The position numbers and the translations under genes are program-made. Shown in pieces: positions 22,425 through 45,519 of a DNA stretch of 64,000 nt. Source of the DNA: Epithemia pelagica (Eukaryota; Protista; Bacillariophyta). The DNA is taken from NCBI GenBank assembly GCA_946965045.2, contig OX337232.1:310001-374000 (forward strand), given 5' to 3'. The notes beneath the pieces were generated by a model, which saw nothing but the letters and a program-made list of their open reading frames with translations, was not told the DNA's origin and did no database searches. Each line of letters starts with the position of its first letter. Position 1 is the first letter of the stretch.

Positions 22425-23111
22425 GATGAAATGTTTATAGAGAGAATAAATAATGAATCGTCTGATTCATTGTAGAAATAAACAAATAAAATAGCATTAC
22501 TGAGACTGTCTCGAGGGCGTAGGAGTCGAGAGATTATCCAATGGCCCTATGTAGTAGTCTTGAGAGTGAATATCAGTGCCGTCACATATTCGTTGTTGGC
22601 ATCCAAATGCGGACTCCATCATATATATTTCATGCAAGCTACTACCAAAGTTCGAACTCCCAACAACAACATACAATGGATCGAGGGAGGTTGGATTGGG
22701 TTGGAACCCCAAATGGAATCCCTCGTAGCTTTCTGTAGTATAGTTTTAAACTAAACCAATGGGGATTTCTACGGTCTTTATAACGATTCGTTCTAGTAGC
22801 AAGCGATCCCACAATTAGAACCAGCCGACCATGCTCACAGTGATCAATTCATGATGGTGCTGTTGCCCCCCTGGTTGTGCTTGTTGTTGCCGCAACAAGG
22901 TGGATGTCAGGTCCCATTCACACGATACTGGGAAGAGATTGCCATTCGCTTCTTCTTGTGCACCCAACAAAGTCCTATGCTTCAATTCTTTGCACTAATC
23001 GTTATATCTCTTCTATTTTATTCAGTTGGAGGCCAATGCGTCTATTCCCATAGTTTCCCGTCGTACGTCCCAAAACCCCATTTGTTCTGCCATGGTCTCG
23101 ACGTAGGACTT

Positions 23112-23765
23112 TTACGTCAGCCAAGGCAAAGAGCTTCCCTGTTCGGCCGCCGTCTGCTTCTTGAGCCAAGCTACAGCCCCATCGTTCAATGGATTAGTGC
23201 GTTGATTGGTACTCATAGACAGGCTTTTAGGAGTTACACCTTTCTTTGCATCAATCAATGCTTGGATATCATGTTTTTTCTTTTCGGTATTGGTCTCAAG
23301 TTTCTTGAGTTCCAGTTGAAAGATTTCTTCGCTTTCTTTCAAGCTGGTTTGAAAGATTTCTTCTCTTTCTTTCAGTTCCAATTGAAAGATTCGGTCCTCC
23401 ATGCGCATAGTTCGGTCTTCCATGCGCATAGCATCCATCTTAATGTTTGCCATATATGCAATGCCCAAAGGTACAACTGCAGAAATTGCAACAGAAATCG
23501 CAGCAATCGTATTTGCCGTGCCAGCTTTGTCAACAGACTGTTGGGCTGCCTCGACAGTCGCCACTTGGAGCTCTTCGGCGTTCATATCGGACGGCTGTTT
23601 CGGATCTTTGTCAGAGTTCTCAGAGTTCGTACTACAAAGACAGAAGTTTTTGTAAGAAATCTGGGCCCTCAAAGGACGGGTCGGCGAGAATGCCACCGTC
23701 GCTTTTACAGAAAGAAGCACGGCAATCAGCAAGCTTCCCAACAAGCAACACCATTTGTCTCTCAT
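23112..23765 (-). CDS. Gene X copy 1: putative plastid-targeted protein with a TM helix and coiled coil
   Basis: MRDKWCCLLGSLLIAVLLSVKATVA-FSP (ASAFAP-like); TM TIAAISVAISAVVPLGIAYM; heptad-like E/K-rich region. Confidence 0.7.
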   Translation of the reverse strand: MRDKWCCLLGSLLIAVLLSVKATVAFSPTRPLRAQISYKNFCLCSTNSENSDKDPKQPSDMNAEELQVATVEAAQQSVDKAGTANTIAAISVAISAVVPLGIAYMANIKMDAMRMEDRTMRMEDRIFQLELKEREEIFQTSLKESEEIFQLELKKLETNTEKKKHDIQALIDAKKGVTPKSLSMSTNQRTNPLNDGAVAWLKKQTAAEQGSSLPWLT

Positions 23766-24311
23766 TTTGCTAAAGAAGGGACACAAACAATTCAATTGAT
23801 CAGAATTTCTTTTTTAATTTGCACCGCTATTCTCGGCAACAGACGTTAATCTCAAGAAATGGCGACAACAACGGTGGGTTGAAAGAGAGAAGAGAGACTC
23901 AGAGCTCAGAGGATTGTCGGTGGAAATCGCCACGTCAGTGTGTTCGAGCTGAACAACTCGTATTTTTGCGCGACCAAGAACTAGTCGAGATAAGCCCCTT
24001 TCTGGGAGGCACACTTCCTATTGGTTGGAGAGATTGGAGATGGTCTGACTCAGCGTCAGGTTTGAGGGAAGGTAGGTGGTGGGGGTGCTAGTGGTAGGAG
24101 GTAGGTCAAAATGTCCCCGTGGGAATGATCCCATCTACCTCCCTGGTCCCCGTCTATAAAAATCGTGACAGGAACCGGTCTAATAGGTTTACGGTTTACA
24201 TGCGTGTGAAGTGTCTCCTGTCCCCGTGGGAGAACCAACTGCCAGGTTAGATAGACTCCCATGTATTCCCGTGCACGGGAATAGGGCACGATATTGTCTA
24301 GGAGTACTTCT

Positions 24312-24887: not shown

Positions 24888-25574
24888 GATGAAATGTTTA
24901 TAGAGAGAATAAATAATGAATCGTCTGATTCATTGTAGAAATAAACAAATAAAATAGCATTACTGAGACTGTCTCGAGGGCGTAGGAGTCGAGAGATTAT
25001 CCAATGGCCCTATGTAGTAGTCTTGAGAGTGAATATCAGTGCCGTCACATATTCGTTGTTGGCATCCAAATGCGGACTCCATCATATATATTTCATGCAA
25101 GCTACTACCAAAGTTCGAACTCCCAACAACAACATACAATGGATCGAGGGAGGTTGGATTGGGTTGGAACCCCAAATGGAATCCCTCGTAGCTTTCTGTA
25201 GTATAGTTTTAAACTAAACCAATGGGGATTTCTACGGTCTTTATAACGATTCGTTCTAGTAGCAAGCGATCCCACAATTAGAACCAGCCGACCATGCTCA
25301 CAGTGATCAATTCATGATGGTGCTGTTGCCCCCCTGGTTGTGCTTGTTGTTGCCGCAACAAGGTGGATGTCAGGTCCCATTCACACGATACTGGGAAGAG
25401 ATTGCCATTCGCTTCTTCTTGTGCACCCAACAAAGTCCTATGCTTCAATTCTTTGCACTAATCGTTATATCTCTTCTATTTTATTCAGTTGGAGGCCAAT
25501 GCGTCTATTCCCATAGTTTCCCGTCGTACGTCCCAAAACCCCATTTGTTCTGCCATGGTCTCGACGTAGGACTT

Positions 25575-26228
25575 TTACGTCAGCCAAGGCAAAGAGCTTC
25601 CCTGTTCGGCCGCCGTCTGCTTCTTGAGCCAAGCTACAGCCCCATCGTTCAATGGATTAGTGCGTTGATTGGTACTCATAGACAGGCTTTTAGGAGTCAC
25701 ACCTTTCTTTGCATCAATCAATGCTTGGATATCATGTTTTTTCTTTTCGGTATTGGTCTCCAGTTTCTTGAGTTCCAGTTGAAAGATTTCTTCGCTTTCT
25801 TTCAAGCTGGTTTGAAAGATTTCTTCTCTTTCTTTCAGTTCCAATTGAAAGATTCGGTCCTCCATGCGCATAGTTCGGTCTTCCATGCGCATAGCATCCA
25901 TCTTAATGTTTGCCATATATGCAATGCCCAAAGGTACAACTGCAGAAATTGCAACAGAAATCGCAGCAATCGTATTTGCCGTGCCAGCTTTGTCAACAGA
26001 CTGTTGGGCTGCCTCGACAGTCGCCACTTGGAGCTCTTCGGCGTTCATATCGGACGGCTGTTTCGGATCTTTGTCAGAGTTCTCAGAGTTCGTACTACAA
26101 AGACAGAAGTTTTTGTAAGAAATCTGGGCCCTCAAAGGACGGGTCGGCGAGAATGCCACCGTCGCTTTTACAGAAAGAAGCACGGCAATCAGCAAGCTTC
26201 CCAACAAGCAACACCATTTGTCTCTCAT
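25575..26228 (-). CDS. Gene X copy 2
   Basis: Protein identical to copy 1 in the ORF track. Confidence 0.7.
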   Translation of the reverse strand: MRDKWCCLLGSLLIAVLLSVKATVAFSPTRPLRAQISYKNFCLCSTNSENSDKDPKQPSDMNAEELQVATVEAAQQSVDKAGTANTIAAISVAISAVVPLGIAYMANIKMDAMRMEDRTMRMEDRIFQLELKEREEIFQTSLKESEEIFQLELKKLETNTEKKKHDIQALIDAKKGVTPKSLSMSTNQRTNPLNDGAVAWLKKQTAAEQGSSLPWLT

Positions 26229-26774
26229 TTTGCTAAAGAAGGGACACAAACAATTCAATTGATCAGAATTTCTTTTTTAATTTGCACCGCTATTCTCGGC
26301 GACAGACGTTAATCTCAAGAAATGGCGACAACTACGGTGGGTTGAAAGAGAGAAGAGAGACTCAGAGCTCAGAGGATTGTCGGTGGAAATCGCCACGTCA
26401 GTGTGTTCGAGCTGAACAACTCGTATTTTTGCGCGACCAAGAACTAGTCGAGATAAGCCCCTTTCTGGGAGGCACACTTCCTATTGGTTGGAGAGATTGG
26501 AGATGGTCTGACTCAGCGTCAGGTTTGAGGGAAGGTAGGTGGTGGGGGTGCTAGTGGTAGGAGGTAGGTCAAAATGTCCCCGTGGGAATGATCCCATCTA
26601 CCTCCCTGGTCCCCGTCTATAAAAATCGTGACAGGAACCGGTCTAATAGGTTTACGGTTTACATGCGTGTGAAGTGTCTCCTGTCCCCGTGGGAGAACCA
26701 ACTGCCAGGTTAGATAGACTCCCATGTATTCCCGTGCACGGGAATAGGGCACGATATTGTCTAGGAGTACTTCT

Positions 26775-27350: not shown

Positions 27351-28037
27351 GATGAAATGTTTATAGAGAGAATAAATAATGAATCGTCTGATTCATTGTA
27401 GAAATAAACAAATAAAATAGCATTACTGAGACTGTCTCGAGGGCGTAGGAGTCGAGAGATTATCCAATGGCCCTATGTAGTAGTCTTGAGAGTGAATATC
27501 AGTGCCGTCACATATTCGTTGTTGGCATCCAAATGCGGACTCCATCATATATATTTCATGCAAGCTACTACCAAAGTTCGAACTCCCAACAACAACATAC
27601 AATGGATCGAGGGAGGTTGGATTGGGTTGGAACCCCAAATGGAATCCCTCGTAGCTTTCTGTAGTATAGTTTTAAACTAAACCAATGGGGATTTCTACGG
27701 TCTTTATAACGATTCGTTCTAGTAGCAAGCGATCCCACAATTAGAACCAGCCGACCATGCTCACAGTGATCAATTCATGATGGTGCTGTTGCCCCCCTGG
27801 TTGTGCTTGTTGTTGCCGCAACAAGGTGGATGTCAGGTCCCATTCACACGATACTGGGAAGAGATTGCCATTCGCTTCTTCTTGTGCACCCAACAAAGTC
27901 CTATGCTTCAATTCTTTGCACTAATCGTTATATCTCTTCTATTTTATTCAGTTGGAGGCCAATGCGTCTATTCCCATAGTTTCCCGTCGTACGTCCCAAA
28001 ACCCCATTTGTTCTGCCATGGTCTCGACGTAGGACTT

Positions 28038-28691
28038 TTACGTCAGCCAAGGCAAAGAGCTTCCCTGTTCGGCCGCCGTCTGCTTCTTGAGCCAAGCTAC
28101 AGCCCCATCGTTCAATGGATTAGTGCGTTGATTGGTACTCATAGACAGGCTTTTAGGAGTCACACCTTTCTTTGCATCAATCAATGCTTGGATATCATGT
28201 TTTTTCTTTTCGGTATTGGTCTCCAGTTTCTTGAGTTCCAGTTGAAAGATTTCTTCGCTTTCTTTCAAGCTGGTTTGAAAGATTTCTTCTCTTTCTTTCA
28301 GTTCCAATTGAAAGATTCGGTCCTCCATGCGCATAGTTCGGTCTTCCATGCGCATAGCATCCATCTTAATGTTTGCCATATATGCAATGCCCAAAGGTAC
28401 AACTGCAGAAATTGCAACAGAAATCGCAGCAATCGTATTTGCCGTGCCAGCTTTGTCAACAGACTGTTGGGCTGCCTCGACAGTCGCCACTTGGAGCTCT
28501 TCGGCGTTCATATCGGACGGCTGTTTCGGATCTTTGTCAGAGTTCTCAGAGTTCGTACTACAAAGACAGAAGTTTTTGTAAGAAATCTGGGCCCTCAAAG
28601 GACGGGTCGGCGAGAATGCCACCGTCGCTTTTACAGAAAGAAGCACGGCAATCAGCAAGCTTCCCAACAAGCAACACCATTTGTCTCTCAT
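28038..28691 (-). CDS. Gene X copy 3
   Basis: Protein identical to copy 1 in the ORF track. Confidence 0.7.
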   Translation of the reverse strand: MRDKWCCLLGSLLIAVLLSVKATVAFSPTRPLRAQISYKNFCLCSTNSENSDKDPKQPSDMNAEELQVATVEAAQQSVDKAGTANTIAAISVAISAVVPLGIAYMANIKMDAMRMEDRTMRMEDRIFQLELKEREEIFQTSLKESEEIFQLELKKLETNTEKKKHDIQALIDAKKGVTPKSLSMSTNQRTNPLNDGAVAWLKKQTAAEQGSSLPWLT

Positions 28692-29184
28692 TTTGCTAAA
28701 GAAGGGACACAAACAATTCAATTGATCAGAATTTCTTTTTTAATTTGCACCGCTATTCTCGGCGACAGACGTTAATCTCAAGAAATGGCGACAACAACGG
28801 TGGGTTGAAAGAGAGAAGAGAGACTCAGAGCTCAGAGGATTGTCGGTGGAAATCGCCACGTCAGTGTGTTCGAGCTGAACAACTCGTATTTTTGCGCGAC
28901 CAAGAACTAGTCGAGATAAGCCCCTTTCTGGGAGGCACACTTCCTATTGGTTGGAGAGATTGGAGATGGTCTGACTCAGCGTCAGGTTTGAGGGAAGGTA
29001 GGTGGTGGGGGTGCTAGTGGTAGGAGGTAGGTCAAAATGTCCCCGTGGGAATGATCCCATCTACCTCCCTGGTCCCCGTCTATAAAAATCGTGACAGGAA
29101 CCGGTCTAATAGGTTTAAGGTTTACATGCGTGTGAAGTGTCTCCTGTCCCCGTGGGAGAACCGACTGCCAGGTTAGATAGACTC

Positions 29185-29714: not shown

Positions 29715-30778
29715 GACCAACGGGTTGGCAAGACGACGCATGGTTGGAGAGTTTCTCTGTGTTTGCCAGTTCTATCGTACGCCTCTATCTTATAGGCACC
29801 ACAACGCTGATGGCAAGTGCGTGCTCTTCACGATATACGGATATTGTCTTAGTCTCGCTAGGAAGGAACGCCGCCATGGTGGACTTCAACCCAAGATCCA
29901 ACGATTGGGTGTGTTCACGAACGGGACCAGGAGCAAAGCTTCAAGCGTCCGGTTTAAGATACAAGTTTAATTCTTATTATTCGGAGGCCGCTTCTGACCG
30001 CTCAAAGAGTATGCAATAGCTTTTCAGTCGCGCGAAACCAATGGTACTTTCAGTTCTACAGTGCTATGTTTTGTACTAGTCGATGCTACTCAAACGAATG
30101 ATCGGTCTCGACGTCAGGCATTACGTACAACAGCGTCCTCTCCGGAACACGAATGAGAATTGCGCAGTTAGATGATCCCAGCAGGTGATGGCCCGTGCAG
30201 GGTGTTGAAGTTACAAAATAAAGATACAAACTCAACTTTTGACTTAAAGCGTACTCTTAGCAGAGATAACAATTCAACTTCACCTTCTCAATTCAAAAAA
30301 TGACTCTGTCTAACTTGAATATCTCTTGATTAGTCAATTATGCACATTCCACGAAAGAACTTCAAACTTTAAGTCAATCTCAGTATTTTCCCAACTTGAA
30401 TTCAACTTATTACTCAAATTGATCCCGTTCCTAGTAACTTTATTGTACAACTAAAATTCGAATTTGAAACGTCTCAACTCGACTTCCCTATTTTAAGTCA
30501 TATTCTTTTCATAGCCGACTTAAATTCATGAAATAAGTCGACCCACAGAAAAGTCTGACTTGACTTTGTAAAGCGACTTAAGTCGGAAAAACGACTTATT
30601 TGGAGCTACAAGTTCGATTTAACTGTCCGACTTTTCGATAAAACTTAGTCGCAACCACCCAACCACGCCTTAGGCAGCATCACTCATCACTCACTCCCAA
30701 CTCCCACCTCTCTCTCATACCTCGTACTCTCATAGCACCTCTCCCTCACCCATCATCAACATACATGCACAATACACC

Positions 30779-32527
30779 ATGAAGATTATTGTTAACGGTC
30801 ACCTTGAACCAGATCATTACCTTTCCCAAGTTCCATTGTCGCTATTACAACGGATTCTTAAACCAGAAGCTCGACTTGAAACCATCGAAATCCACCTTCA
30901 TGTGAATGCGTGGTTGACGGACGTTGGAGGTTCATTAGCAGTCAAGAAAGGACACGGACTCAATTGCCGTTGTATACACGGGAGGTGTGTTTTATGTCGA
31001 CCGTTCACAACATCACAAGCTACGACTGTGATTGTAAACCTTCTTGACCGTCACCTCCGAATGAATATACCCTTCAATACCTCGAGTGACAATTGCATCG
31101 ATAAAGAAACACTTGAGCTGACAACGAACTTCAAAGTCCATATTTTGCACATCAACCAAAATGAAGCATTTTCAGAATGTTGTAAATTTGTTTCCTCAAA
31201 TTTGGTTCATTCCATAACTCCAAAGCATTCAGTGCGTCCATTCGTTCGCTGCTGGTTCATCCGTACCAGGACAACGACGCAATTCCATTTCATGAACCAC
31301 CCAACATGTTCCTTGACGAACAAATCAATTCCAATACACATTATCCTCAGTTTTATTGAGCTCTACATCAAGTCTCATTATCCTACTTCAATCTCAACAA
31401 CAGTCGAGACCAAATCTGTGGACTCTGCCATCACACCTACGGACAACAAAGAAACACCGTCAGTCAACTCTGAACCCACACCCAATCCTCTCCATGTTGT
31501 CACACCACTCCCCAACTTGTCACTGGCTATTCCGAGTAAGAGTCATTCCCACCAACTCAGAAAATCCCAACACCGACCCTTGAATCCATTTCTACGCCGC
31601 AATACACGACGAACTATTGCCCAGAAGACACAACTCCTACTATCTGGCTCCTCTGCAAAGCAAACAATCAACTACTATGACGTCTCCACGCGTCATATAC
31701 CTGGAACAACACCCAAATATTCGCCAATGACGAATATCAAATTCCCAACATCACAAAGGCAATTTACGGACACAACCAGAGAGTCACTCCTTTCTATATA
31801 CAACGATCTCTGTGCTTTTCATTTGTCACTGGTATGTCAAGATGAATTTTCAATGCCCCGTGATTCATGGGAGCAATGGATCGATCTCTCTTTTGAAGAA
31901 GATGATGGAACATACGACCGAGCCTTTATGTGTCTCATTGTAATCATAATGAGCTCAAGTACGTCAGACCAACAACTATCTTTGCTTGTTCCCCGGCTAT
32001 TCTTTGCTGGGTTGACGTCCGCTACTGCCGTGATGGATTTCGTCTCTTTATACGGGATGAACGTGCTTTGTTCGTTATTGACGTCCACTGGCCGGTTCTA
32101 TCAGAATGCGGAACGAATAACGAACGCAGCTGATCATTTTATTCAAAAACACAACGGCAGGATTCCTTCCGACATTTCGGTTATCGAACTCGCTTCATTA
32201 TTTGGCATTGGCTACTAGACAGCCAACATTGTCGTTACTTATGCATTCGAAAGAGTGGACGGTATTCCGTCCGATATCCACGTTATACGATGGGCCAATC
32301 ATCTTAATTGGGTCCCCAAAACTTGCAGAGATGGATTTGAATGCTCAAAGTACATTGAGTCATGGCTGCCCGTCGATAAATGGGGTTCAGTCAACCCTAC
32401 TTTTGGGTCGCTTGGACAAATGATTAACACACGCAACTCCAAGCTAATGGATGTACTACATTCAGAGATTGTCTCACCCAATGTGAGAAAATGTGTTTCT
32501 CAAATCCTCAAGGAATATGGTCGCTAA
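30779..32527 (+). pseudogene. Endonuclease III-like (HhH-GPD DNA glycosylase/AP lyase) cargo gene with a long unknown N-terminus; one in-frame TAG at 32216-32218
   Basis: FMCLIVIIMSSSTSD...HNGRIPSD...LASLFGIGY*TANIVVTYAF...GIPSDIHVIRW...IESWLPVDKWGSVNPTFGSLGQ aligns with Nth HNGEVPED...LEALPGVGRKTANVVLNTAF...IAVDTHIFRV. The frame continues past the TAG; there is no C-terminal Fe-S Cys motif. Confidence 0.88.
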
Positions 32528-32586
32528 TTGTCACTACTAAGTATTATTTCCTAACTGTGGTTCATTGTCTTCCTTTCTTTGTTTTT

Positions 32587-32861
32587 CTTGTCGTTCTTAT
32601 TCTGATTGTAGTTAGTGTAAGTTGTCATTCTTTTTTTGTTTCTTGTCGTTCTTATTCTGATTGTGATTGTTGTTTGCTGTCTTTCGTTCTTGGATTCTTG
32701 TCGTTCTTATTCTGGTGGTAATTGTTGTTCGCTGTCTTTCTTTCTTTGATTCTTGTCGTTCTTATTCTGGTTTTGATTGTGTTTCCTTGTCTTTCTTTCT
32801 TTGATTCCTGTCGTTCTTATTCTGGTTGTGATTGTGTTTCCTTGTCTTTCTTTTTTCGTGG
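32587..32861. repeat. 55-bp tandem repeat x5 spanning the transposase stop codon
   Basis: The core c[t/c]tgtcgttcttattctg starts at 32587, 32642, 32697, 32752 and 32807. Confidence 0.9.
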
Positions 32862-35800
32862 AGAAGTACGACGTTGGACAGCTTCTCCTCCAGCTTCGCT
32901 TGACGATGCAATGGGAGGGTCCTTCCTCTTCCGAGATGACTTGGAACCAGTCTTGGAACCACGGGTGGTGGATGCCGTTGCCGTCAAACCAACCATTGAA
33001 GCATCTGCGCTTGTTGAATCCGTATTCACCACCAGATGCTCTTTCAACATTTCAACCAACAGGTCATCGTCATCCATGGCTTCGTCCGTACCTGTGACAG
33101 CTTCTTTGCTTCCTCCAGTCAAATCGATAAACTCGATGGTATCTGCAAAATCCATGTCTTCCTCTGTCGGTTCTTTTTTATTATCACTTGACTCTTTGAG
33201 AAACCCATATTCAGGCATGTCTTCCGGTCCTGCTTGCACGGTCTTGTTCATGTAGTCCCTCAATACTCCAACTGTGGACAGCATCGTGTCAACTTGTAGT
33301 CCGTCAGTTCCGTCGCAAGGCACTTGAACCGATGATCCATTTCGCGATTCACTAGTGGTGCGAGTTGTCACAGACGCCATTGCTGTCCCATTGGTTGCTG
33401 TCCCATTGGTTGCTGTCCCATTGCTATCGGCCTGCTGGGATTGTCGGGGTCCTTGTGCACCAACACTCTCTGTGGGACCTGTCTCACGTCCTCGAGATGC
33501 ATCCGTGTTGTTGGACCGAGCAGGAAGTTTCTTATCGCCATCCTCAAAATGAAGCACAGGTTGCTTTTTTCGTAACTCCTCCTCAGCGACAAGAATTTTT
33601 TTTACGACAGGCCGAGTCACATACCCCAAAGTCCGCATTTGAAAGTTGCTTGCCGACTCTCTGTTCATTAGGGGGTTATTGTCGAACCAAGACGAGGATG
33701 AAAACACCCTCTCCTGAAAAGCATTGGTAGCTGGCTTGCCGAGCCAAACAAGAGAGGTTACAAACACATGGGGAAACGTATTCTTGTTGGCTTCCCACCA
33801 TCCCAATACGTCAAAATATTTCCCAACCGACATGAAGTCGTCCTTGGCACATTGTTGTGCGAACCAGGCCTTCGTTGCACCATTCCAATCCGTGAACTGT
33901 TCCAGATACAAGTTGGTTGGGTGCCTGTTAATGAGATCTGCCCATCGCCCACGAACCTTCTTCTCGCAATGCTTCTTGTATTCCTGATATTCCTCTATGA
34001 GTTCCTTCTCTAATTTCTTTTTACGTTCAGCCTCTCTTGCTTGTGGATTTAGTTCATCTTCATTGTTGTTGGTCACTGAACTATCGTCATCCGAGTCTCC
34101 CAAAGCGAGTTCATCAAAGATGTCGAACTCATCAGCAACAGCACCAACAGTCGTCACTTCAGGTCCATGTTCCGCAGTTTCGGCAGTGGTTCCGTCCGTC
34201 GCGTTGTTCTGGTTGTTCTGGTTGTCGTGGTTGTCTGCAGGAGTTTGGTCATCACTACCCGCACTTTCTTGATTGGGGACTGGTAATGGATAGTAGAATT
34301 TATCCATCATATCGGCGACGAAGTGGCCTTGGATTCTAGCAAAGTCCACGTCCGAGAAAATTCCCATCTTCTTGAATAGCTTTGGACGCCATCCACAGAG
34401 GAATGGGTTGCCAATCATGGCCTTCTCGGCGTCCTCATCCTTCTCCTCCATCATATAGAACCTATATTCACGCAAAATGCGTTGAATAAGGTTCTGTGTG
34501 GGCTCCTCAAGTAGCGCATGGCTGACCTGATGCCGTTTCTTCTGCTGGAGAGCAGCCATTGTGGAACTTGCATCCCAAGGTGTAGATTTTGTATCGAGGA
34601 CTTGGATGCCCTTCTTTGTCATTTGTTCAACACAGTGCTTGGATAGGAATATTTCGAGCAAAGAAGCGGATGCAGCGGAAGGGTTGTCCGTTTGGAGAGT
34701 CATTCCGCATTTCTGGACCGGGTTGAGAACTGCTTCATATTCGATTAGTTGGTCCCACTGTTCAAGAGTCAGATATTTTGCCTTGAATTCCGGGTCGTTA
34801 ACAAGGGAGGATGAAGCGTAATCATCCATTACAAACTTGTTCCGGATGAGGCCGTGTATCATAATGATACATGAGCCGATTCGAGTGGCATTGGGAATGG
34901 GGATTTCAATAATCACGCGTCCATTCTTCATTGCCCACTGACGAAGTTTTTCGAATCGACTACGTTTCTTGCTTGACATAAGCCAGGACGCAAATATATG
35001 CACGACTTTGTAGAGTTCGGTGAACTCTTTGTTCTCGTCGATTACCACTTTTCCTCGACGGCGAACAGCCTGCCCTGTGGCATGCTTCATTATAAGTTCG
35101 GCACGGTGCATGTCACACTTGCCTCCCTTGTTCGAACCAACAATGTATTTGCTCGCCAATATAGCTGAGTTTGTGTTATCGTTGATTGCTGCTGCAACAT
35201 CATCCTTAGTGAAACCAATGGTCAGAAGCAAAGACTCGGTATGTGTTGCAATTTGGACGGCTGTGTGTCCTTTGGTTTCGACAAGACCAATAGGGATGCG
35301 GTAGGAGTTGCAATTCCGAGGATTGACAAAGAACAGAGTTACGCCCAGCACGTCCTTTTTTTATCCTTGCCATATGTCATGGGCGATACTCGCTTAAGGG
35401 ATGGGGTGACCACAGAGTCTTCGGTAGTGGTCACGGATCTTGTTTCCAAGTTGTGACACGACGACAAGAACGTTGTTGTAGGAGTCAATGCGCAATCTGG
35501 TCATTGCACGATTGCTTATCGCACAATCATGTGAGTTCAACATCGTAGAATGTGTCGCCGCAAACTCTAACAGTGACCGGAAAGACTCTTTCTCTACCGT
35601 CCGTGAGGGAAAGCCACAATCATTGACAAACTCATAGATTTTCTGGTGGAAAAGGTTCCGAGTGTCAGCTTTGGTAATAGTATTGGGCATGAAAGTCAGA
35701 AGTTTTTTCTGATTGTTGTTTTCCAATATGGCATCTTCACGAGATTTCTCCCTAACTTCAAGGGGGTGAAAACGAAGGCGGTGTTGTTGTATGTTAGACG

Positions 35801-36443
35801 ATACTTTTTGATGTCCATGCATGATTACTGCATCAAAGAGACTTCGCTCTTTATTTGCAAAGCATTTCAGACAGATGGTCAAGCGTTTAGCAATGTTGTG
35901 AAAATTCTTGTCTTTTGGGTCCTTTTCACCTTCTTTTAGAACCTTGAAACAACGTTCTAAGCCGGGTGAATTACTGACATCTGGTTTGTGTTCGTCCTTG
36001 TACTTTTTGAGTTTCGCCCAGTTGATGTGACTCACTAGTCCCCATAGAGAGCCCTTGAGGTTCTTGAAGATTGTTTTTGGAGCAGGTTTGAACTTGATTG
36101 GTCGTTTTTCTTCCTTGTATCGTTCGAGGACCTCTGCACTTAGGGACGTTCCTTGCTGTTGACTGTTCGTGGCTTCTTGGTTCAAAGTTCCATTGGTGGC
36201 ATCTTGATTGTTGGTGGCATCCTGGTTGTTGGTGGCATCCTGGTTGTCGGTGGCTTCCTGGTTGTTGGTGGCATCCTGATTCGTCGACTCGTTGGTGGAG
36301 GTATTGGTGACGGAGGGAGGGTTTTCTGTTGGAGGGTTGGCCATGGGATCGGAAGAAGGGTTTGTCGTCCAGTTGGACTCGGATATTGGGGAGATTGATG
36401 ATATGCTGCCAGAGGATGAGGTTTGTGTAACTACTGGTATCAT
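32817..36443 (-). pseudogene. hAT transposase, one reading frame of about 1208 codons with two in-frame TAA stops (35394-96, 35361-63)
   Basis: BED finger CLKC...HRLRFH; PSRTVEKESFRSLL; catalytic HDIW; INDNTNS; CDMH; NATRIGS; dimerization domain WWEANKNTFPH...KPATNAFQERVFSS. Confidence 0.92.
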
Positions 36444-37624
36444 GCTCCAAAGATGAATGAGGCAGATATGAGACCGAGTGGATTGCAGGTACTGTGCTGT
36501 AATGCACCTCTTGCTGTGTGTCGTATGTGCTCGTGCTGGTGGTAGGTGGTTGATTCTGACTTATTTCATACAGAAATTCTGACTTCGCCTGATGGCCCAT
36601 CGACTTTAAGTCATCCATTTCATGTTTCATGACTTAACTATGTAGAGTAAAAGTCGTATAGTTGGTAGTCCTAACTAGACTTTTGGGGATAGAAAGTCAG
36701 GAATTATTCGTTGGGAATCGACTTCGACTTTTTGTTGTAAGTCATGACTTTTTTGGGGTGACGTGGCTTTGTAGGAAGTTCCTGGATCTTAGGCGGAACT
36801 TGACTTGATGACAACTTCAACAGAAAAAAGTTGTTATTTGCATCTGGTGAAATGAATGGCTGTGAGAAAGTCAGTAAAAATGGAGTGGTAATTCGACTTG
36901 ATTTTTTGGAAAAAAGTTAAAAGTTGGCTTTTTTAAGTCAAAAGTCAAAAATGATGAAGTCAGACTTCAACACCCTGGGCCCGTGACACGAATCCATCAA
37001 CCCAACGAAATTCGAGTTGTCGGCGAAGTGCGAAGAGAGACATGTCTTCTCTTCGGTGGGAAAGTGCAACTGTTACTGCAACGACCAATGGTCTTGGATT
37101 AACCACAAAACACAGAGAAGAATCGAATTCAATTGTGTCAATTGGCAAACAGACACACATCTCGGAGATACCGAAAAAGTGAGTCACGTACGATCCATGA
37201 TGGGTGAGCACCATCAACTGAGAGAAAGAAAAAGATACTTCTGGATCGGATGAATGGTGGTGGTTTCTGGTGTCCATGTAGAGTGTCGTCGAATTGAATC
37301 GAGACTGACCCAAGTTCCTTCCCTCCATTGCCACAGAATTCTGAACACTAGTAGAACAATTGAAAGAAACCGAACCACCCACACACAAGAGAGTGGTACG
37401 TACGTCCATTCTGTATTGTTTCTCGAGGCCCATTGGCATGTCTCCCGAATGAATCCTTGCTGGATGGATTCGACTGGACGACGACTGACCCCCCTCTGTC
37501 TGGTGTGTTGTTTGGGTGTGTGTTTGCGCGTGTCTCCACAGAGAGAGAGAGAGAGAAGGTTTGTCATTGAGGGTGCGACTCTCTACTCAATTGCGGTAGT
37601 AGTAGTAGCGCCCATCTTGGATGA

Positions 37625-40680: not shown

Positions 40681-43600
40681 TGGTGTGGCCGTCGACGTCC
40701 TGTCGATGTAGGCCTCTTTTTCCCGATAACCTCATCTCCCAGGAGGGATACCTGGGTTGATTTAGTTTGGTTGTTGCTTTGTGTTTTTCTGAGCGTGTTT
40801 TTCTCTTTGCATTTCTGTTCAATGATGCCCTGGGCCCTATCTTTCGTCGCAATCTGGTTGCGAGAGGGAGGTCCGCGTGGTGGCTATTCTTCGTTCTCTT
40901 ATGCCACCTTTGGTCCCAACCAGATGCAACGACGACGACGGCGTTACAAGACTCGAATTTATCACGTGCGACGCCGGTTTACTACTAATATAATGGCCTT
41001 TGACTGCACAACGGATTCAACGGTTACATGGGCTGGTACGATTGACCGTCAACGGACCCCTTTTACTAAGGCCCGAGTGCCCTCTGTCCGAAGACGCGCG
41101 AGGCAACACAAGAAAACTACCAGACCAAAGAAAACTACGCATGACACCTATGATTTCAACTACCAAGGCATCTATGTCCCTACAACATGGACAATACAAG
41201 ACGAGCCGCCTCTAGATCCAACATCAGAGCGACTATCTCGTTGGTTTGGGTCAGCTGAGGAGCTTCAGTCTGCAATTTGGAAGCCATGGCTGAGCAAGGG
41301 GCCGGATCCATTGGCACAGTTTCGTGCCATTCGAGCATTGAGTGGCTCCACATTCTCAAGATCTCGGTCACCCAAGCAACGAATGCGGCAAGCAATGATT
41401 GCCGCTGCCAAGTTAACCGGAAAATTGCCTCCCCAAACTGATCCTGAGTCCTTGTTGCCACCAGCATTGCAGCATCGCATGTCTGTCTATCTCAATGCAG
41501 CAGACGATGCAGACCTGCCCGTGGTGATCGATACAGGAGCATCCACATCGTTGACTCCTCGACTAGAAGACTTTGATGGACCACTCAAAGAGTGTGAGAC
41601 CACTGAGCTGAATGGATTATCCAGTACAACAGCCGTGGTTGGAGTAGGAATGGCTGCCTGGACGTTAAGGGACGTGTTTGGTGTGGTTCGAACCATCCGA
41701 ACACGGGCCTACTACGTTCCAGAGGCGCAGATACGCCTGTTTAGCCCCCAGACCTACTTCCAAGAGCAAGCTAAAGGCGAATTGTCGGTCAATGCTTTTC
41801 GTTCTCGCTTGACTCTTCACGATGGGAGCGAACTGGAGTTCCCCTTTCATCCCAACAGTAACCTCCCTTTGATGCTCTCTGGACGGCAAACCAAGATGGG
41901 CCTTGCATTCGAAGACGTCATGGCCTTATCCAAAGAGTTTGATTGTCGTGGTCTTATGTCAGTGGCGGATGAAACAAATCAGAATGTCACCCAGGCGCAG
42001 AGAGAGCTATTGACCTGGCACTGGAAGTTAGGTCACGCTAATTTTGAATGGATCCAGGATTTGTGTCGCGATCCTCAAACGGATCGACGTCGAATTCTTC
42101 ACACGAAGCATCGACAAGTGTCAAACTGTCCTGTCAATGGTTTGCGCTGCACAGCTTGTCAATTGGGCAAACAGAGGCGTCGTGGTGCTAATACCCAACA
42201 TACGCACACGAAGGATGGTCGTCACATGGTCACTCGGTCAGAGAATCTTCGACCAGGTGACTGCGTTAGCCTTGACCAGTATGACTCGACGCTCACTGGC
42301 CGTCTCCCTCACACTAGAGGAAAGGAACCCAAGAAAGATCAGTACACTGGCAGTACATTGTTTATAGATCATGCTACAGGATTGATGCATTGTGTACATC
42401 AAGTCTCCCTAAACACTGGTGAAACCATCGAAGCCAAACTTCAATTCGAACGGTTTGCACAGGACCATGGAGTTACAGTCAAGTCGTACCTGGCGGATAA
42501 TGCCCCTTTTGGCAATACCAAGTTTGTGGACGCAGTGAAACATGCTGGTCAGTCCCTGTCGTTTTCTGGTGTGGGGGCCCATCACCAAAATGGTGTGGCC
42601 GAGCGTGGCGTCCGTACGGTAACCTCTTGGGCCCGTACTATGATGTTGCACGCAGTATTGCATTGGCCGGAGCACGCCCATGACCTAAGTCTATGGCCCT
42701 TCGCTCTCAATCACGCTATCTGGTTGTGGAATAATCTTCCCAAGCGAGGTTCCTTTATTGCCCCGCTGGAATTATTTACCGGAACAGTTTTCCCTACCTT
42801 GGCCCATCTACATAGGAGCCATGTTTGGGGTTGCCCAGTGTACGTTTTGGACCCGAAGATCCAAGACGGGAAGAAACTTCCCAAGTGGTCGCCTCGTGCC
42901 CGTCGAGGGCAATATCTTGGAGTCTCTCCCGACCATTCTAGCAGGGTGGGCTTAATTCTCAATATTTCTACCGGCTATGTGAGTCCGCAATATCACGTCG
43001 TCTACGACGACCTCTTTTCAAGTGTCCCTAACGCCGAAACTGGCGGTGTCCTACAACAAGACATGTTCACAGGGTCCTTTTGGGACCATCTTGTGGCCTC
43101 TGGTCTGGAGCGGATTGACGATGGCGATTTTGACGACGAACAGTCTCAGCCACCACCCCTTCACCACGACTGGCTGACCCCTGAGGAAGCCGATGCTCTT
43201 CGCCATCAACAAAATGACGCAGCTCGGATAAATCCCTTACCTTTGCCTCCTCCTCCCATCCCTGTTCCAGAGGGAGCTGCTGCTCCAGAGGGAGCTCTGG
43301 TGCCCTTGGCTCCAGAGGGAGATGACGACAGTGAGATTCAACTGGATGGAGACCCCATTTTCCCTCACCTTTTTCCTTTGGATAACGTGGAGCCAAATCC
43401 ACCAGCCGCTCCTCCAGATGACTTGATTCAACCTTTGGTGGTAGATGGAATGTGGGACGATCCCAACAACTCCACCATCGACTCTGGAGACGAAATTGTA
43501 ATCTTTGAGCACGAGGAACAGGATGAGGAAGACCCAGTTCGCGCACAAGATAAGTCAAGACGTGCGCAACATTTGGAACAACCGGACGAGATGCACTTTG

Positions 43601-45519
43601 GTCGTGGAAAGCGCGCACGCAAACCTAATCCTAAGTACGCCTCGTACTCGCGTGAACGTTGGAAGGAGCACGCGTTCTTTGGTCATGATGATTATGCGCG
43701 ACTAAAGGTAAAGCGTGACTGCTTAAACGATTCATTCCTGGCAGGACTTGACTGGAATTCAACCATCCGTGACCTCAAATCCACACAGTCAACGCTGATG
43801 AGTCGCATGATGGACATGAACACCAACCCTAAGACAGGAACTGTCGAGGCTATGCATCCAATGGTACTGATCACCAAGGCCGATGCAGCGGATAACCCCA
43901 GATGGAATGAAGCCATGAGCGGTCCAGATGCCGCTGGCTTCATGGAGGCATGTAAAAAGGAAATAGACACACTATTCCGCCTCATGAAGGCTTGGATAGT
44001 CGTCGATCGCCAACCTTGGATGAACGTAATCCCATCTACATGGGCCTTCAAAAGGAAGCGATTCCCTGACGGCTCTGTCAAGAAACTGAAAGCAAGATTT
44101 TGCGCTCGAGGAGACTTTCAAGTGGAAGGAGTGGACTTCTTCGATACCTTTGCCCCAGTGGTAAACTGGACCACAGTCCGCTTGATGCTCATCCTATCTA
44201 TTATCCTAAACCTCGCCACAGTGCAGGTAGACTACACCGCGGCATTCCTTCACGCCCCAATTGATCGTGATCCCAGATGGGACTCAATGACACGTCAAGA
44301 GCGTGAAAGAAGCGGTGTCTGCGTCGAGATGCCCAGAGGATTTGGACAAGACGGAAAGGTACTAAAACTACAACGATCACTGTACGGGCTGAAACAAGCC
44401 CCACGGAATTTCTTCCAACATTTCAAAGGGCAGTTGGAACGAGTCGGCTTTGTTGCCCAGGACTCGGTTGATCCCTGCCTATTTATTTCAGACAAGGTAA
44501 TAGCGGTGGTCTATGTCGACGACACGCTATTATTTTACAGTCCCAAAAGAGAGTACATCGATGAAGTACTTGATAAACTCAAGAAACAAGAGAACGCTGA
44601 GCTCGATGTTGAAGACAGCGTGGCTGGATTCTTGGGCGTCCATATCGAACGTGACGAGACCCAAGGAACAATCAAATTGACCCAACAAGGTCTGATTAAG
44701 AGAATTCTAACTGCCTTACAAGTTGGTGACTTGGACCGAAGCTTTACCCCAGCTTTATCTAAGCCCATTGTAGAAGACAAGAATGGAGATCCCCCACAAG
44801 GTAGATACAACTACGCAAGTGTGATTGGGATGCTTCAGTATTTACAAGCGCACAGTCGCCCCGACATCACCTATGCGGCGAGTCAATGTGCACGCTTTGC
44901 CTTTAGCCCAAAGAGGTCACATGAGCAAGCCGTTGAAAAGATTGGACAGTACCTTAAGCACACGCAAGATCAAGGACTGATCCTTAAGCCCTCCACGAAT
45001 CTGGACATCGACTGTTTCGTCGACGCCGATTTCGCTGGTTTGTGGCCCTATGAAGAAAAATTGGATTCGACCTGTGTGAAAAGTCGCACGGGATTCGCTA
45101 TCTGTTTGGCAAATTGTCCCATGGTCTGGACAAGCAAATTACAAAGTTCAATTGCCTTGAGCACGATGGAGGCCGAATACAACGCATTGAGTGAGTCGTT
45201 GAAGTCGGTCCTACCACTACGAGAGCTGTTGACCCACGTTGCAGAAGGAGTTGGGCTCAGCAAAGAATATACAACAACATTTAAGACGACAGTCTGGGAA
45301 GATAACATGGGAGCCTTGACTTTGGCCAACCTAGAACCTGGACGGATCACACCTCGGTCGAAATATTACGCAGTGAAGATGCACTGGTTTCGACAACATA
45401 TAAGCGATCGGTTGCGAGTCGTCAAAGTCGATACGACACAACAGCGCGCCGACATTCTGACCAAAGGTCTCACCCAATCCACGTTTGAGCACATTCGGAA
45501 GCTCCTCTGTGGATGGTGA
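40681..45519 (+). CDS. pol: Copia Pol polyprotein (PR-IN-RT-RH), open in the gag frame directly after the UGA
   Basis: VIDTGAS; WHWKLGH...CTAC; QNGVAER; KARFCARG; LYGLKQAPRNF; YVDD; FVDADFAG; EDN; ADILTKGL. Confidence 0.96.
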   Translation, partial: WCGRRRPVDVGLFFPITSSPRRDTWVDLVWLLLCVFLSVFFSLHFCSMMPWALSFVAIWLREGGPRGGYSSFSYATFGPNQMQRRRRRYKTRIYHVRRRFTTNIMAFDCTTDSTVTWAGTIDRQRTPFTKARVPSVRRRARQHKKTTRPKKTTHDTYDFNYQGIYVPTTWTIQDEPPLDPTSERLSRWFGSAEELQSAIWKPWLSKGPDPLAQFRAIRALSGSTFSRSRSPKQRMRQAMIAAAKLTGKLPPQTDPESLLPPALQHRMSVYLNAADDADLPVVIDTGASTSLTPRLEDFDGPLKECETTELNGLSSTTAVVGVGMAAWTLRDVFGVVRTIRTRAYYVPEAQIRLFSPQTYFQEQAKGELSVNAFRSRLTLHDGSELEFPFHPNSNLPLMLSGRQTKMGLAFEDVMALSKEFDCRGLMSVADETNQNVTQAQRELLTWHWKLGHANFEWIQDLCRDPQTDRRRILHTKHRQVSNCPVNGLRCTACQLGKQRRRGANTQHTHTKDGRHMVTRSENLRPGDCVSLDQYDSTLTGRLPHTRGKEPKKDQYTGSTLFIDHATGLMHCVHQVSLNTGETIEAKLQFERFAQDHGVTVKSYLADNAPFGNTKFVDAVKHAGQSLSFSGVGAHHQNGVAERGVRTVTSWARTMMLHAVLHWPEHAHDLSLWPFALNHAIWLWNNLPKRGSFIAPLELFTGTVFPTLAHLHRSHVWGCPVYVLDPKIQDGKKLPKWSPRARRGQYLGVSPDHSSRVGLILNISTGYVSPQYHVVYDDLFSSVPNAETGGVLQQDMFTGSFWDHLVASGLERIDDGDFDDEQSQPPPLHHDWLTPEEADALRHQQNDAARINPLPLPPPPIPVPEGAAAPEGALVPLAPEGDDDSEIQLDGDPIFPHLFPLDNVEPNPPAAPPDDLIQPLVVDGMWDDPNNSTIDSGDEIVIFEHEEQDEEDPVRAQDKSRRAQHLEQPDEMHFGRGKRARKPNPKYASYSRERWKEHAFFGHDDYARLKVKRDCLNDSFLAGLDWNSTIRDLKSTQSTLMSRMMDMNTNPKTGTVEAMHPMVLITKADAADNPRWNEAMSGPDAAGFMEACKKEIDTLFRLMKAWIVVDRQPWMNVIPSTWAFKRKRFPDGSVKKLKARFCARGDFQVEGVDFFDTFAPVVNWTTVRLMLILSIILNLATVQVDYTAAFLHAPIDRDPRWDSMTRQERERSGVCVEMPRGFGQDGKVLKLQRSLYGLKQAPRNFFQHFKGQLERVGFVAQDSVDPCLFISDKVIAVVYVDDTLLFYSPKREYIDEVLDKLKKQENAELDVEDSVAGFLGVHIERDETQGTIKLTQQGLIKRILTALQVGDLDRSFTPALSKPIVEDKNGDPPQGRYNYASVIGMLQYLQAHSRPDITYAASQCARFAFSPKRSHEQAVEKIGQYLKHTQDQGLILKPSTNLDIDCFVDADFAGLWPYEEKLDSTCVKSRTGFAICLANCPMVWTSKLQSSIALSTMEAEYNALSESLKSVLPLRELLTHVAEGVGLSKEYTTTFKTTVWEDNMGALTLANLEPGRITPRSKYYAVKMHWFRQHISDRLRVVKVDTTQQRADILTKGLTQSTFEHIRKLLCGW

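What the first reader, a model, noticed from the sequence alone, without database searches (positions are those of the whole stretch)
30198..36977. hAT transposon carrying its own endonuclease III/HhH-GPD DNA glycosylase gene
Seen: exact TIRs and an 8-bp TSD enclose two convergent genes, an hAT transposase and a 582-codon gene whose C-terminal ~175 aa align with Nth (HhH motif, catalytic Lys position, D-x-H motif, WLP...W..N..G.GQ). It lacks the Fe-S cluster motif. Established: hAT elements typically encode only a transposase. HhH-GPD enzymes include the 5mC-excising DEMETER/ROS1 and MBD4, and other transposons carry anti-silencing cargo (VANC in VANDAL, TET/JBP with KDZ elements). Inference: this may be an undescribed transposon-encoded base-excision or demethylation system, either counteracting diatom TE methylation or processing excision-site lesions.
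Basis: partly seen in the sequence, partly recalled or inferred. Interest (0 to 1): 0.9.

Follow-up and report, generated by a model that had tools for sequence, protein, structure and literature searches.

The report
Decayed hAT transposon carrying DNA glycosylase
This is a broken copy of a cut-and-paste (hAT) jumping gene from a diatom whose family carries, next to its transposase, a long-conserved DNA base-removal enzyme derived from endonuclease III; I found this cargo in no paper, and in this copy both genes are knocked out by stop codons.

Summary
Window 30198-36977 has exact 14-nt inverted ends and an 8-bp target duplication (GGCCCGTG). They enclose two convergent genes: a hAT transposase and a 582-codon gene whose last ~225 residues form an endonuclease III/NTH1-type HhH-GPD domain without the Fe-S cysteines.

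This copy is dead. A TAG replaces the catalytic Lys, and two TAA codons flank the transposase's HDIW motif.

Seven other copies on other contigs of the same assembly (ENA ERZ21939226) carry the same gene pair between CAGGGT ends. Six have perfect 8-bp duplications. They represent six lineages.
- Synonymous sites between lineages are saturated, yet the glycosylase domain stays 44-75% identical.
- Lys and Asp are invariant in the eight aligned intact members.
- The glycosylase and transposase trees have the same topology.

So the cargo is old, co-inherited and under purifying selection, not a recent host-gene capture. A sister copy shares the TAG at a different site, so a glycosylase-null element still transposed. 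An intact sister gene (P0167) exists.

The function is untested. Removal of a silencing base such as 5mC is my leading guess (about 0.4). I found no paper describing this pairing. The scan has already reported this family on other pieces of this genome.

The parts
30190..30197 (.). Left copy of the 8-bp target-site duplication, GGCCCGTG
   Evidence: Identical to 36978-36985.
30198..30211 (+). Left terminal inverted repeat, CAGGGTGTTGAAGT (fits the hAT 5'-YARNG start)
   Evidence: 100% complementary to 36964-36977. The same CAGGGT... ends occur in seven other copies.
30198..30630 (.). Left subterminal region with clustered TGACTT/AAGTCA hexamers (candidate transposase-binding sites)
   Evidence: 17 of 19 occurrences of the hexamer in the element lie within about 430 bp of either end.
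30779..32527 (+). Glycosylase pseudogene: 582 codons including one in-frame TAG. It has a family-specific N-terminal region (about aa 1-204), a low-complexity basic linker with the conserved TR...Y..RH.PG motif, and a C-terminal EndoIII/NTH1-like HhH-GPD domain (aa 358-582, nt 31850-32524).
32216..32218 (+). TAG at the catalytic Lys codon (GIGY-K-TAN). The codon is AAG in copy L003 and Lys in P0167. Copy L001 shares the TAG.
   Evidence: Logan contigs of four runs read A at 32216.
32273..32284 (+). DIHV motif holding the conserved catalytic Asp of the HhH-GPD fold
   Evidence: Aligned to VDTHV of NTHL1. The Asp is invariant in the family alignment.
32566..32853 (.). 55-nt tandem repeat (5.2 copies) between the two convergent genes, overlapping the end of the transposase ORF
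32817..36443 (-). hAT transposase pseudogene: 1208 codons with two in-frame TAA stops. It has a CCHH (BED-like) signature at 35766-35873 and a hAT dimerisation domain around 33693-33836.
35394..35396 (-). TAA replacing an invariant Phe (TTC in sister copies L001 and L003), 6 codons upstream of the HDIW Asp
35361..35363 (-). TAA replacing Ser (TCA in sister copies), 5 codons downstream of the HDIW Asp
36557..36977 (.). Right subterminal region with clustered TGACTT/AAGTCA hexamers
36964..36977 (-). Right terminal inverted repeat
36978..36985 (.). Right copy of the target-site duplication, GGCCCGTG

Best explanation
Anatomy (shown, about 0.95). The stretch is one decayed copy of a hAT transposon family in a diatom genome (ENA assembly ERZ21939226). 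Every full-length member encodes two convergent genes between CAGGGT... inverted ends. One is a transposase of about 1200 aa. The other is a protein of about 580-640 aa with a family-specific N-terminal region and a C-terminal endonuclease III/NTH1-derived HhH-GPD glycosylase domain. That domain keeps the Schiff-base Lys and the catalytic Asp but has lost the 4Fe-4S cysteines. The pair was acquired once, has been inherited together and is kept by purifying selection. In this copy the Lys codon is TAG and the transposase has two TAA codons, so neither protein can be made here. Any movement of this copy would depend on proteins from intact relatives.

Mechanism (inferred, about 0.4). The glycosylase is an active bifunctional base-excision enzyme that works for the element. 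Most likely it excises a silencing-associated base (5-methylcytosine or a derivative) from element DNA so that host base-excision repair restores unmodified cytosine. It would then be a transposon-encoded counterpart of DEMETER/ROS1. It acts in trans, because a glycosylase-null progenitor still transposed.
For: - Ends and mobility: exact TIRs plus an 8-bp TSD here. Sister copies at 99.2% and 98.6% identity sit at other loci with their own TSDs.
- Linkage: lineages L002, L004, L005, L006 and L009 have the same gene pair inside CAGGGT TIRs. Four have perfect 8-bp TSDs and L004 an imperfect one.
- hAT identity: Pfam PF05699 scores above its cut-off, and the family profile hits Hermes at E 6e-5.
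- Glycosylase homology: the family profile hits NTHL1 at E 2e-21 and bacterial EndoIII at 1e-13, with Lys and Asp aligned. P0167 alone gives E 3e-15. TIGR01083 nth gives E 2.7e-19. The AlphaFold model has pLDDT above 90 in most of the domain, and its top Foldseek hits are NTHL1 and EndoIII.
- Selection: between lineages pS is 0.74-0.88 (saturated) against pN 0.16-0.39 in the domain. K142, D161 and H163 are invariant.
- Single origin: 31 of the 32 family rows form one clade (99 SH-aLRT) apart from a 51-row cellular NTH clade. Transposase and glycosylase trees of six lineages share one unrooted topology.
- Action in trans: the window copy and L001 share the TAG but have different TSDs.
- Hints for the methylation idea: 10 of 40 copy-specific substitutions are CpG transitions, although CpG makes up 8.4% of sites. 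Fungal DNA transposons, hAT included, carry TET/JBP genes, for which the authors speculate removal of silencing marks (PMC12730594).
- Possible transcription: run X4 covers only the glycosylase gene and reads Lys at 32216.
Against: - No activity, substrate or expression has been demonstrated.
- The domain is nearest to NTH1/EndoIII (oxidised-pyrimidine repair), not to DEMETER/ROS1. It lacks the Fe-S cluster that both of those have.
- The N-terminal region matches no known fold, and in particular no methyl-DNA reader.
- Scores are below the Pfam HhH-GPD gathering cut-off (17.8-25.1 against 26.2 bits).
- A glycosylase-null element transposed, so the enzyme is not needed in cis and could be dispensable.
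- All verified linked copies come from one genome assembly. Contigs from other samples were too short to show a transposase.
- The kind of run X4 is unknown.
Confidence: 0.4

Rival explanations
1. Transposition-linked repair enzyme. The glycosylase/AP-lyase helps the cut-and-paste reaction itself. It could process damaged or blocked ends at the donor break or at the 8-nt gaps of the new insertion, or it could recruit host base-excision or short-patch repair, rather than acting on epigenetic marks.
For: The closest relatives are true repair enzymes (NTHL1, EndoIII). The lyase Lys and the Asp are conserved. The gene has co-evolved strictly with the transposase.
Against: By established knowledge, known hAT transposition (Hermes, Ac) needs no base excision. 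A progenitor with TAG at the catalytic Lys still inserted at a new site, although supply in trans is possible.
Confidence: 0.2
2. Self-protection against mutational decay. The enzyme removes deamination or oxidation products (T:G, U:G, thymine glycol, 5-hmU) and so slows C-to-T decay of methylated element copies.
For: CpG transitions are about 3-fold over-represented among copy-specific substitutions. Other Fe-S-less HhH-GPD enzymes such as MBD4 act on T:G (recalled knowledge). A thermostable thymine-DNA glycosylase (1kea) is among the structural neighbours.
Against: A diffusible repair enzyme would benefit the whole genome, so selection at the level of the element is weak unless the N-terminal region targets it. 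No such targeting was shown.
Confidence: 0.12
3. The HhH-GPD domain serves as a non-catalytic DNA-binding or structural partner of the transposase, like the Myb-like second protein of PIF/Harbinger elements.
For: The protein has a large family-specific N-terminal region and a conserved linker motif. The Fe-S cluster has been lost.
Against: The catalytic Lys, Asp and neighbouring His are invariant across lineages whose synonymous sites are saturated. Catalytically dead derivatives usually lose these residues.
Confidence: 0.08
4. Passenger with no role. A host NTH gene fragment was captured and is decaying neutrally, so the element is an ordinary hAT with junk cargo.
For: Within the young subfamily the substitutions look neutral. 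For the window copy the count is 10 non-synonymous plus 3 stop-creating changes against 3 synonymous. Three of the four known copies have a broken glycosylase gene.
Against: Post-insertion decay is expected for any transposon copy. Between lineages the domain is strongly conserved while synonymous sites are saturated. The family is a separate clade with a stem of 0.67 substitutions per site. The gene trees are congruent. Intact genes exist in every lineage.
Confidence: 0.03

Closest known systems
hAT superfamily transposons (Ac, Hermes, Tol2)
   Same: 8-bp TSD, short TIRs starting CAGGG (YARNG), clustered subterminal hexamers, a transposase with the C-terminal hAT dimerisation domain (PF05699), a CCHH BED-like signature and a D-I-W motif.
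   Different: The transposase is about twice the usual length (about 1200 aa). The element always carries a second, convergent gene for a DNA glycosylase. By established knowledge, classical hAT elements encode only the transposase.
Endonuclease III / NTH1 (NTHL1) bifunctional DNA glycosylases
   Same: HhH-GPD fold, a G-[IV]-G-x-K-T-A helix-hairpin-helix with the Schiff-base Lys, and the D-x-H-V catalytic Asp. These are the best sequence and structure matches.
   Different: There is no C-x6-C-x2-C-x5-C Fe-S cluster. About 350 extra N-terminal residues have no known fold. The family forms a separate clade. Scores lie far below the nth equivalog cut-off (69.6 against 211.7 bits). The gene is encoded inside a transposon.
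DEMETER/ROS1 5-methylcytosine glycosylases of plants
   Same: Bifunctional HhH-GPD enzymes with Lys and Asp. They offer a possible functional analogy, namely excision of a silencing mark.
   Different: DME/ROS1 have an Fe-S cluster, a discontinuous glycosylase domain (PMC3045615 title and abstract) and extra C-terminal domains. None of these was detected here. The function here is untested.
DNA transposons that carry TET/JBP dioxygenase genes (Kyakuja-Dileera-Zisupton, hAT7 and others in fungi; PMC12730594)
   Same: DNA transposons, including hAT, that carry a second gene for an enzyme acting on modified DNA bases. The authors speculate that it removes silencing marks.
   Different: The enzyme class differs (dioxygenase against glycosylase). 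In fungi the cargo moved often between superfamilies, whereas here one capture was co-inherited with one hAT lineage. The host is a diatom.
VANC anti-silencing proteins of VANDAL (Mutator) elements in Arabidopsis
   Same: A transposon-encoded accessory protein that counteracts DNA-methylation silencing of its own family (recalled knowledge; Hosaka et al. 2017 is cited in PMC12730594).
   Different: VANC is a sequence-specific DNA-binding protein without a known catalytic base-excision domain.

Membership tests
hAT superfamily | 8-bp target-site duplication | tested here: met
   GGCCCGTG on both sides. Perfect 8-bp TSDs also flank six of the seven other copies.
hAT superfamily | Short TIRs with a 5'-YARNG start | tested here: met
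   CAGGGTGTTGAAGT, 14/14 complementary. CAGGGT is conserved in all lineages.
hAT superfamily | Transposase with the C-terminal hAT dimerisation domain (PF05699) | tested here: met
   25.7 bits against a cut-off of 21.4 in the window. Relatives score 24.5-32.2 bits. Hermes is the top PDB hit for the family profile, E 6e-5.
hAT superfamily | RNase-H-like DDE catalytic core | tested here: inconclusive
   An invariant H-D-I-W motif and other invariant acidic residues are present in the alignment. The profile-to-Hermes match covered only the dimerisation region, so the assignment of the first Asp rests on motif resemblance recalled from memory. In this copy the core is interrupted by two TAA codons.
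HhH-GPD superfamily | Helix-hairpin-helix followed by a Gly/Pro-rich loop and a catalytic Asp | tested here: met
   The family profile aligns to NTHL1 and EndoIII across the motif. Foldseek's top hits are HhH-GPD enzymes. The Asp is invariant. The Pfam PF00730 score is below its cut-off (17.8-25.1 against 26.2 bits).
Endonuclease III (Nth/NTH1) family | Catalytic Lys in G-V-G-x-K (bifunctional glycosylase/lyase) | tested here: not met
   Met in intact family members (K invariant). In this window copy the codon is TAG (32216-32218).
Endonuclease III (Nth/NTH1) family | C-terminal 4Fe-4S cluster, Cys-x6-Cys-x2-Cys-x5-Cys | tested here: not met
   The motif is absent from family members P0003-P0042, and no family row in the tree set carries it. 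It is present in many of the cellular NTH hits in the same search. The TIGR01083 match stops at profile position 174 of 192.
Endonuclease III (Nth/NTH1) family | Score above the curated equivalog cut-off (TIGR01083) | tested here: not met
   69.6 bits against 211.7. It is a homologue, not an orthologue.
DEMETER/ROS1 family | Fe-S cluster, discontinuous glycosylase domain and DME-specific C-terminal domains | tested here: not met
   No Fe-S motif. Pfam finds only a weak HhH-GPD match and no DME-specific domains.
DEMETER/ROS1 family | Excision of 5-methylcytosine | not testable with these tools
   This needs enzyme assays.
MBD4-type glycosylases | Methyl-CpG-binding domain plus a monofunctional HhH-GPD domain without the lyase Lys | tested here: not met
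   Pfam, Foldseek and the Atlas find no MBD. The lyase Lys is present in the family.

The most novel reading that the evidence does not exclude
A diatom hAT transposon family has carried its own Fe-S-less, NTH1-derived bifunctional DNA glycosylase since before its lineages diverged. It uses the enzyme in trans to excise 5-methylcytosine, or another silencing or defence base modification, from its own copies. That would make it the first transposon-encoded DNA demethylase of the glycosylase type, and an independent invention of DEMETER-like demethylation outside plants.
Probability: 0.35. Interest if true: 0.85.

Novelty: new variant of a known kind. Interest (0 to 1): 0.7.

Why it matters
Transposons that carry enzymes acting on DNA modification are rare. 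The known examples are TET/JBP genes in fungal DNA transposons and VANC in VANDAL elements. They are informative about the arms race between mobile elements and genome defence.

A base-excision glycosylase kept under selection inside a hAT element would be a new tool in that arms race. Diatom transposons are known to be methylated, but no active demethylase has been described there (recalled knowledge).

The case is directly testable. Intact natural genes exist (P0167, P0003). The catalytic residues are obvious. The genome also holds natural knock-outs: this copy and L001 carry TAG at the Lys codon, which already shows that the enzyme is not needed in cis. An Fe-S-free EndoIII-type enzyme is also of interest to DNA-repair enzymology.

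Tried and rejected
- Pfam on the two pieces of the window gene gave only a 12-bit HhH-GPD hint. Homology had to be shown through intact relatives and profiles.
- Two scans of metagenome contigs, one with the glycosylase profile and one with the transposase profile, found no relative. One scan of viral contigs also found none.
- Short contigs from other samples (L007, L008, L010) hold family glycosylase genes but no detectable transposase or TIR. A Logan contig with convergent ORFs downstream of P0040 had no DNA available. Linkage outside this genome therefore remains untested.
- dN/dS could not be computed between lineages because synonymous sites are saturated. I report pS and pN instead.
- Read laying could not confirm the three copy-specific stop codons, because Logan contigs collapse the near-identical copies. 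They show the majority state, which is A (Lys) at 32216. The stops are present in the public assembly's gene calls: 479-aa and 844-aa products.
- The N-terminal region gave no significant match in the Atlas features, Foldseek against PDB, or AFDB clusters.
The TAG is exactly at the Lys codon, and the two TAA codons lie at -6 and +5 from the HDIW Asp. If the adjacent double change (35394-35395) counts as one event, two events within 34 nt among 21 are expected by chance. Any earlier stop would inactivate the genes equally well. I treat the placement as coincidence and reject recoding or read-through, for which there is no evidence.
- Six literature searches found no hAT-plus-glycosylase report.
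Full report
**1. Observation**

The repeat search finds two perfectly complementary 14-nt arms, 30198-30211 (CAGGGTGTTGAAGT) and 36964-36977. They are the only two matches to that sequence in the 64-kb window, even with two mismatches allowed. Directly outside them lies the same octamer, GGCCCGTG, at 30190-30197 and 36978-36985. The hexamer TGACTT/AAGTCA occurs 19 times in the element, and 17 of those lie within about 430 bp of either end. This is the usual pattern of subterminal transposase-binding sites.

Two long reading frames converge inside the element.
- On the + strand, 30779-32527 reads 479 codons, a TAG at 32216-32218, then 102 more codons in the same frame.
- On the - strand, 36443-32817 reads 1208 codons with two in-frame TAA codons, at 35394-35396 and 35361-35363.

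**2. The transposase**

The 844-aa piece carries the hAT dimerisation domain above Pfam's gathering score (25.7 against 21.4 bits). So do the intact relatives. A profile of five full-length relatives has Hermes transposase as its top four PDB hits (E 6e-5).

The alignment shows an invariant C-x2-C...H-x4-H signature and an invariant H-D-I-W motif. By motif resemblance recalled from memory, that motif holds the first catalytic Asp of hAT enzymes. Together with the 8-bp duplication and the CAGGG start of the TIR, this makes the element a hAT element.

**3. The second gene**

The window's two pieces give almost nothing in Pfam on their own. The protein database holds relatives of 465-639 aa that continue through the TAG position with GIGYKTANIV...GIPSDxHVxRW.

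Evidence that the domain is EndoIII/NTH1-like:
- A profile of eight C-terminal domains matches human NTHL1 at E 2e-21 and bacterial endonuclease III at about 1e-13. The Schiff-base Lys and the catalytic Asp are aligned.
- P0167, an intact gene of the same young subfamily, is 98% identical to the window protein before the TAG and 100% after it. On its own it matches NTHL1 at E 3e-15 and TIGR01083 (nth) at E 2.7e-19.
- An AlphaFold model of relative P0003 has pLDDT above 90 in most of the domain. Its best Foldseek matches are NTHL1, EndoIII, a thymine-DNA glycosylase and MutY.
- Read with X at the TAG, the window protein scores 337 bits along the whole family profile.

Limits on membership:
- Scores stay under the curated cut-offs: Pfam 17.8-25.1 against 26.2 bits, and nth 69.6 against 211.7 bits.
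- The C-x6-C-x2-C-x5-C Fe-S motif is absent from family members P0003-P0042, and no family row in the tree set carries it. It is present in many cellular NTH proteins found in the same search.

So the protein is a homologue and offshoot of EndoIII/NTH1, not a member of that orthologous group.

The first ~200 residues fold into a moderately confident duplicated alpha/beta module that has no significant match in PDB, AFDB clusters or the Atlas. Residues 214-327 of P0003 are predicted to be disordered.

**4. This copy is dead, and how it died**

The window lies on ctg1340l of ENA assembly ERZ21939226. Two near-identical copies lie on other contigs of the same assembly: L001 (99.2%, TSD TGCCTAAC) and L003 (98.6%, TSD CTTCCGAT).

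| Copy | Glycosylase gene | Transposase gene |
|---|---|---|
| Window | TAG at the Lys codon | Two TAA stops unique to this copy: TTC to TAA (an adjacent double change at an invariant Phe) and TCA to TAA |
| L001 | Same TAG, plus a second stop | Unique indels that shift the frame |
| L003 | AAG (Lys), but a 1-nt deletion | Open frame of 1174 aa |
| Copy encoding P0167 | Intact, with a 33-aa in-frame duplication | Not examined |

Copy-specific substitutions in the window copy look neutral: 10 non-synonymous plus 3 stop-creating changes against 3 synonymous.

The window copy and L001 share the TAG and 68 other states, yet sit at different sites. A progenitor lacking the catalytic half of the glycosylase therefore still transposed. 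By parsimony its own transposase frame was then open. The enzyme is thus not needed in cis.

Logan contigs of four runs read A (Lys) at 32216, which is the majority state of the subfamily.

As a description this is correct: the TAG is on the Lys codon, and the TAA codons lie at -6 and +5 from the HDIW Asp. I see no evidence that the placement is more than coincidence.

**5. The family**

- Linkage. Five more diverged lineages in the same assembly (L002, L004, L005, L006, L009) have glycosylases 33-55% identical overall and 44-75% identical in the domain. All have the same convergent gene pair between CAGGGT... TIRs. Four have perfect 8-bp TSDs and L004 an imperfect one.
- Selection. Between lineages the synonymous differences are saturated (pS 0.74-0.88). 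In the domain pN is 0.16-0.39, and second codon positions are 67-89% identical against 30-44% for third positions. Lys, Asp and His are invariant.
- Family size. An exhaustive profile search of 1.84 billion representatives finds 38 family clusters at E of 1e-30 or better. After a gap come cellular NTH proteins at about 1e-24.
- Separate clade. In a tree, 31 of the 32 family rows form one clade (99 SH-aLRT, stem 0.67) apart from a 51-row cellular NTH clade.
- Co-inheritance. Transposase and glycosylase trees of the six lineages have the same unrooted topology. With 105 possible topologies this argues for one capture followed by joint inheritance.

Family members also occur in other samples (JGI 3300048584, ERZ27267782, SRR23447908, ERR11523665). 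Those contigs are too short to show a transposase.

**6. Function**

Shown: homology, conserved catalytic residues, purifying selection, co-inheritance, and dispensability in cis.

Inferred: that the protein is an active glycosylase/lyase that benefits the element.

I rank the candidate roles as follows.

| Role | Probability |
|---|---|
| Excision of a silencing base (5mC or a derivative) | about 0.4 |
| Role in transposition-linked repair | 0.2 |
| Protection from deamination decay | 0.12 |
| Non-catalytic partner of the transposase | 0.08 |
| Junk passenger | 0.03 |

Two weak hints favour a link to methylation. First, 10 of 40 copy-specific substitutions are CpG transitions, although CpG makes up only 8.4% of sites. 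Second, fungal DNA transposons, hAT among them, carry TET/JBP genes (PMC12730594).

One 2024 run of unknown kind (X4) covers only the glycosylase gene, in five 151-nt pieces, and none of the transposase. This could mean the gene is transcribed, but the evidence is not firm.

**7. Novelty**

Six full-text searches found no paper describing a hAT element, or any transposon, that carries an EndoIII-type glycosylase.

The scan itself has already reported this family on other pieces of this genome. Those notes agree with what I tested here.

I class the finding as a new variant of a known kind, namely a DNA transposon with cargo that acts on DNA bases. The particular copy in this window is a pseudogene copy. 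Its value is as a natural knock-out of the glycosylase.

Noticed in passing
window 22851-23849, 25314-26312, 27777-28775: Three 332-aa ORFs on the + strand start exactly 2463 nt apart, which looks like a tandem array of one gene. The first ORF has no Pfam match.
   Followed up: partly
window 32566-32853: A 55-nt unit is repeated 5.2 times (85% matches) in the space between the two convergent genes, overlapping the stop codon of the transposase. Its role is unknown.
   Followed up: no
window 30760-32523 (run X4): A small 2024 run of unknown kind holds five 151-nt pieces that all fall in the glycosylase gene and none in the transposase. It reads Lys (A) at 32216. It may be an RNA run showing transcription of intact copies.
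   Followed up: partly
window 30198-36977 and L001:7420-14200: 10 of 40 copy-specific substitutions are C-to-T or G-to-A changes at CpG, although CpG makes up 8.4% of sites. This hints that the copies are CpG-methylated.
   Followed up: partly
P0167 (ctg1310l of ERZ21939226): The intact sister glycosylase has a 33-aa in-frame tandem duplication in the basic linker. The linker therefore tolerates length changes.
   Followed up: partly
window 36193-36278: An 18-nt coding tandem repeat (4.8 copies) gives a QDATNN-type low-complexity run in the N-terminus of the transposase.
   Followed up: no
window 6616-8811; 40771-45519; 57804-60092: The neighbours are an HSF-type DNA-binding gene, a Copia-type pol (RVT_2, gag_pre-integrs) and a xanthine/uracil permease gene. 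L001 sits beside chlorophyll a/b-binding (PF00504) genes. All of this is consistent with a diatom-type alga.
   Followed up: partly
L001:7420-14200: The sister copy L001 carries a second glycosylase stop (Ser to stop at the position of window 32463) and indels in its transposase (7 nt inserted and 1 nt deleted).
   Followed up: yes
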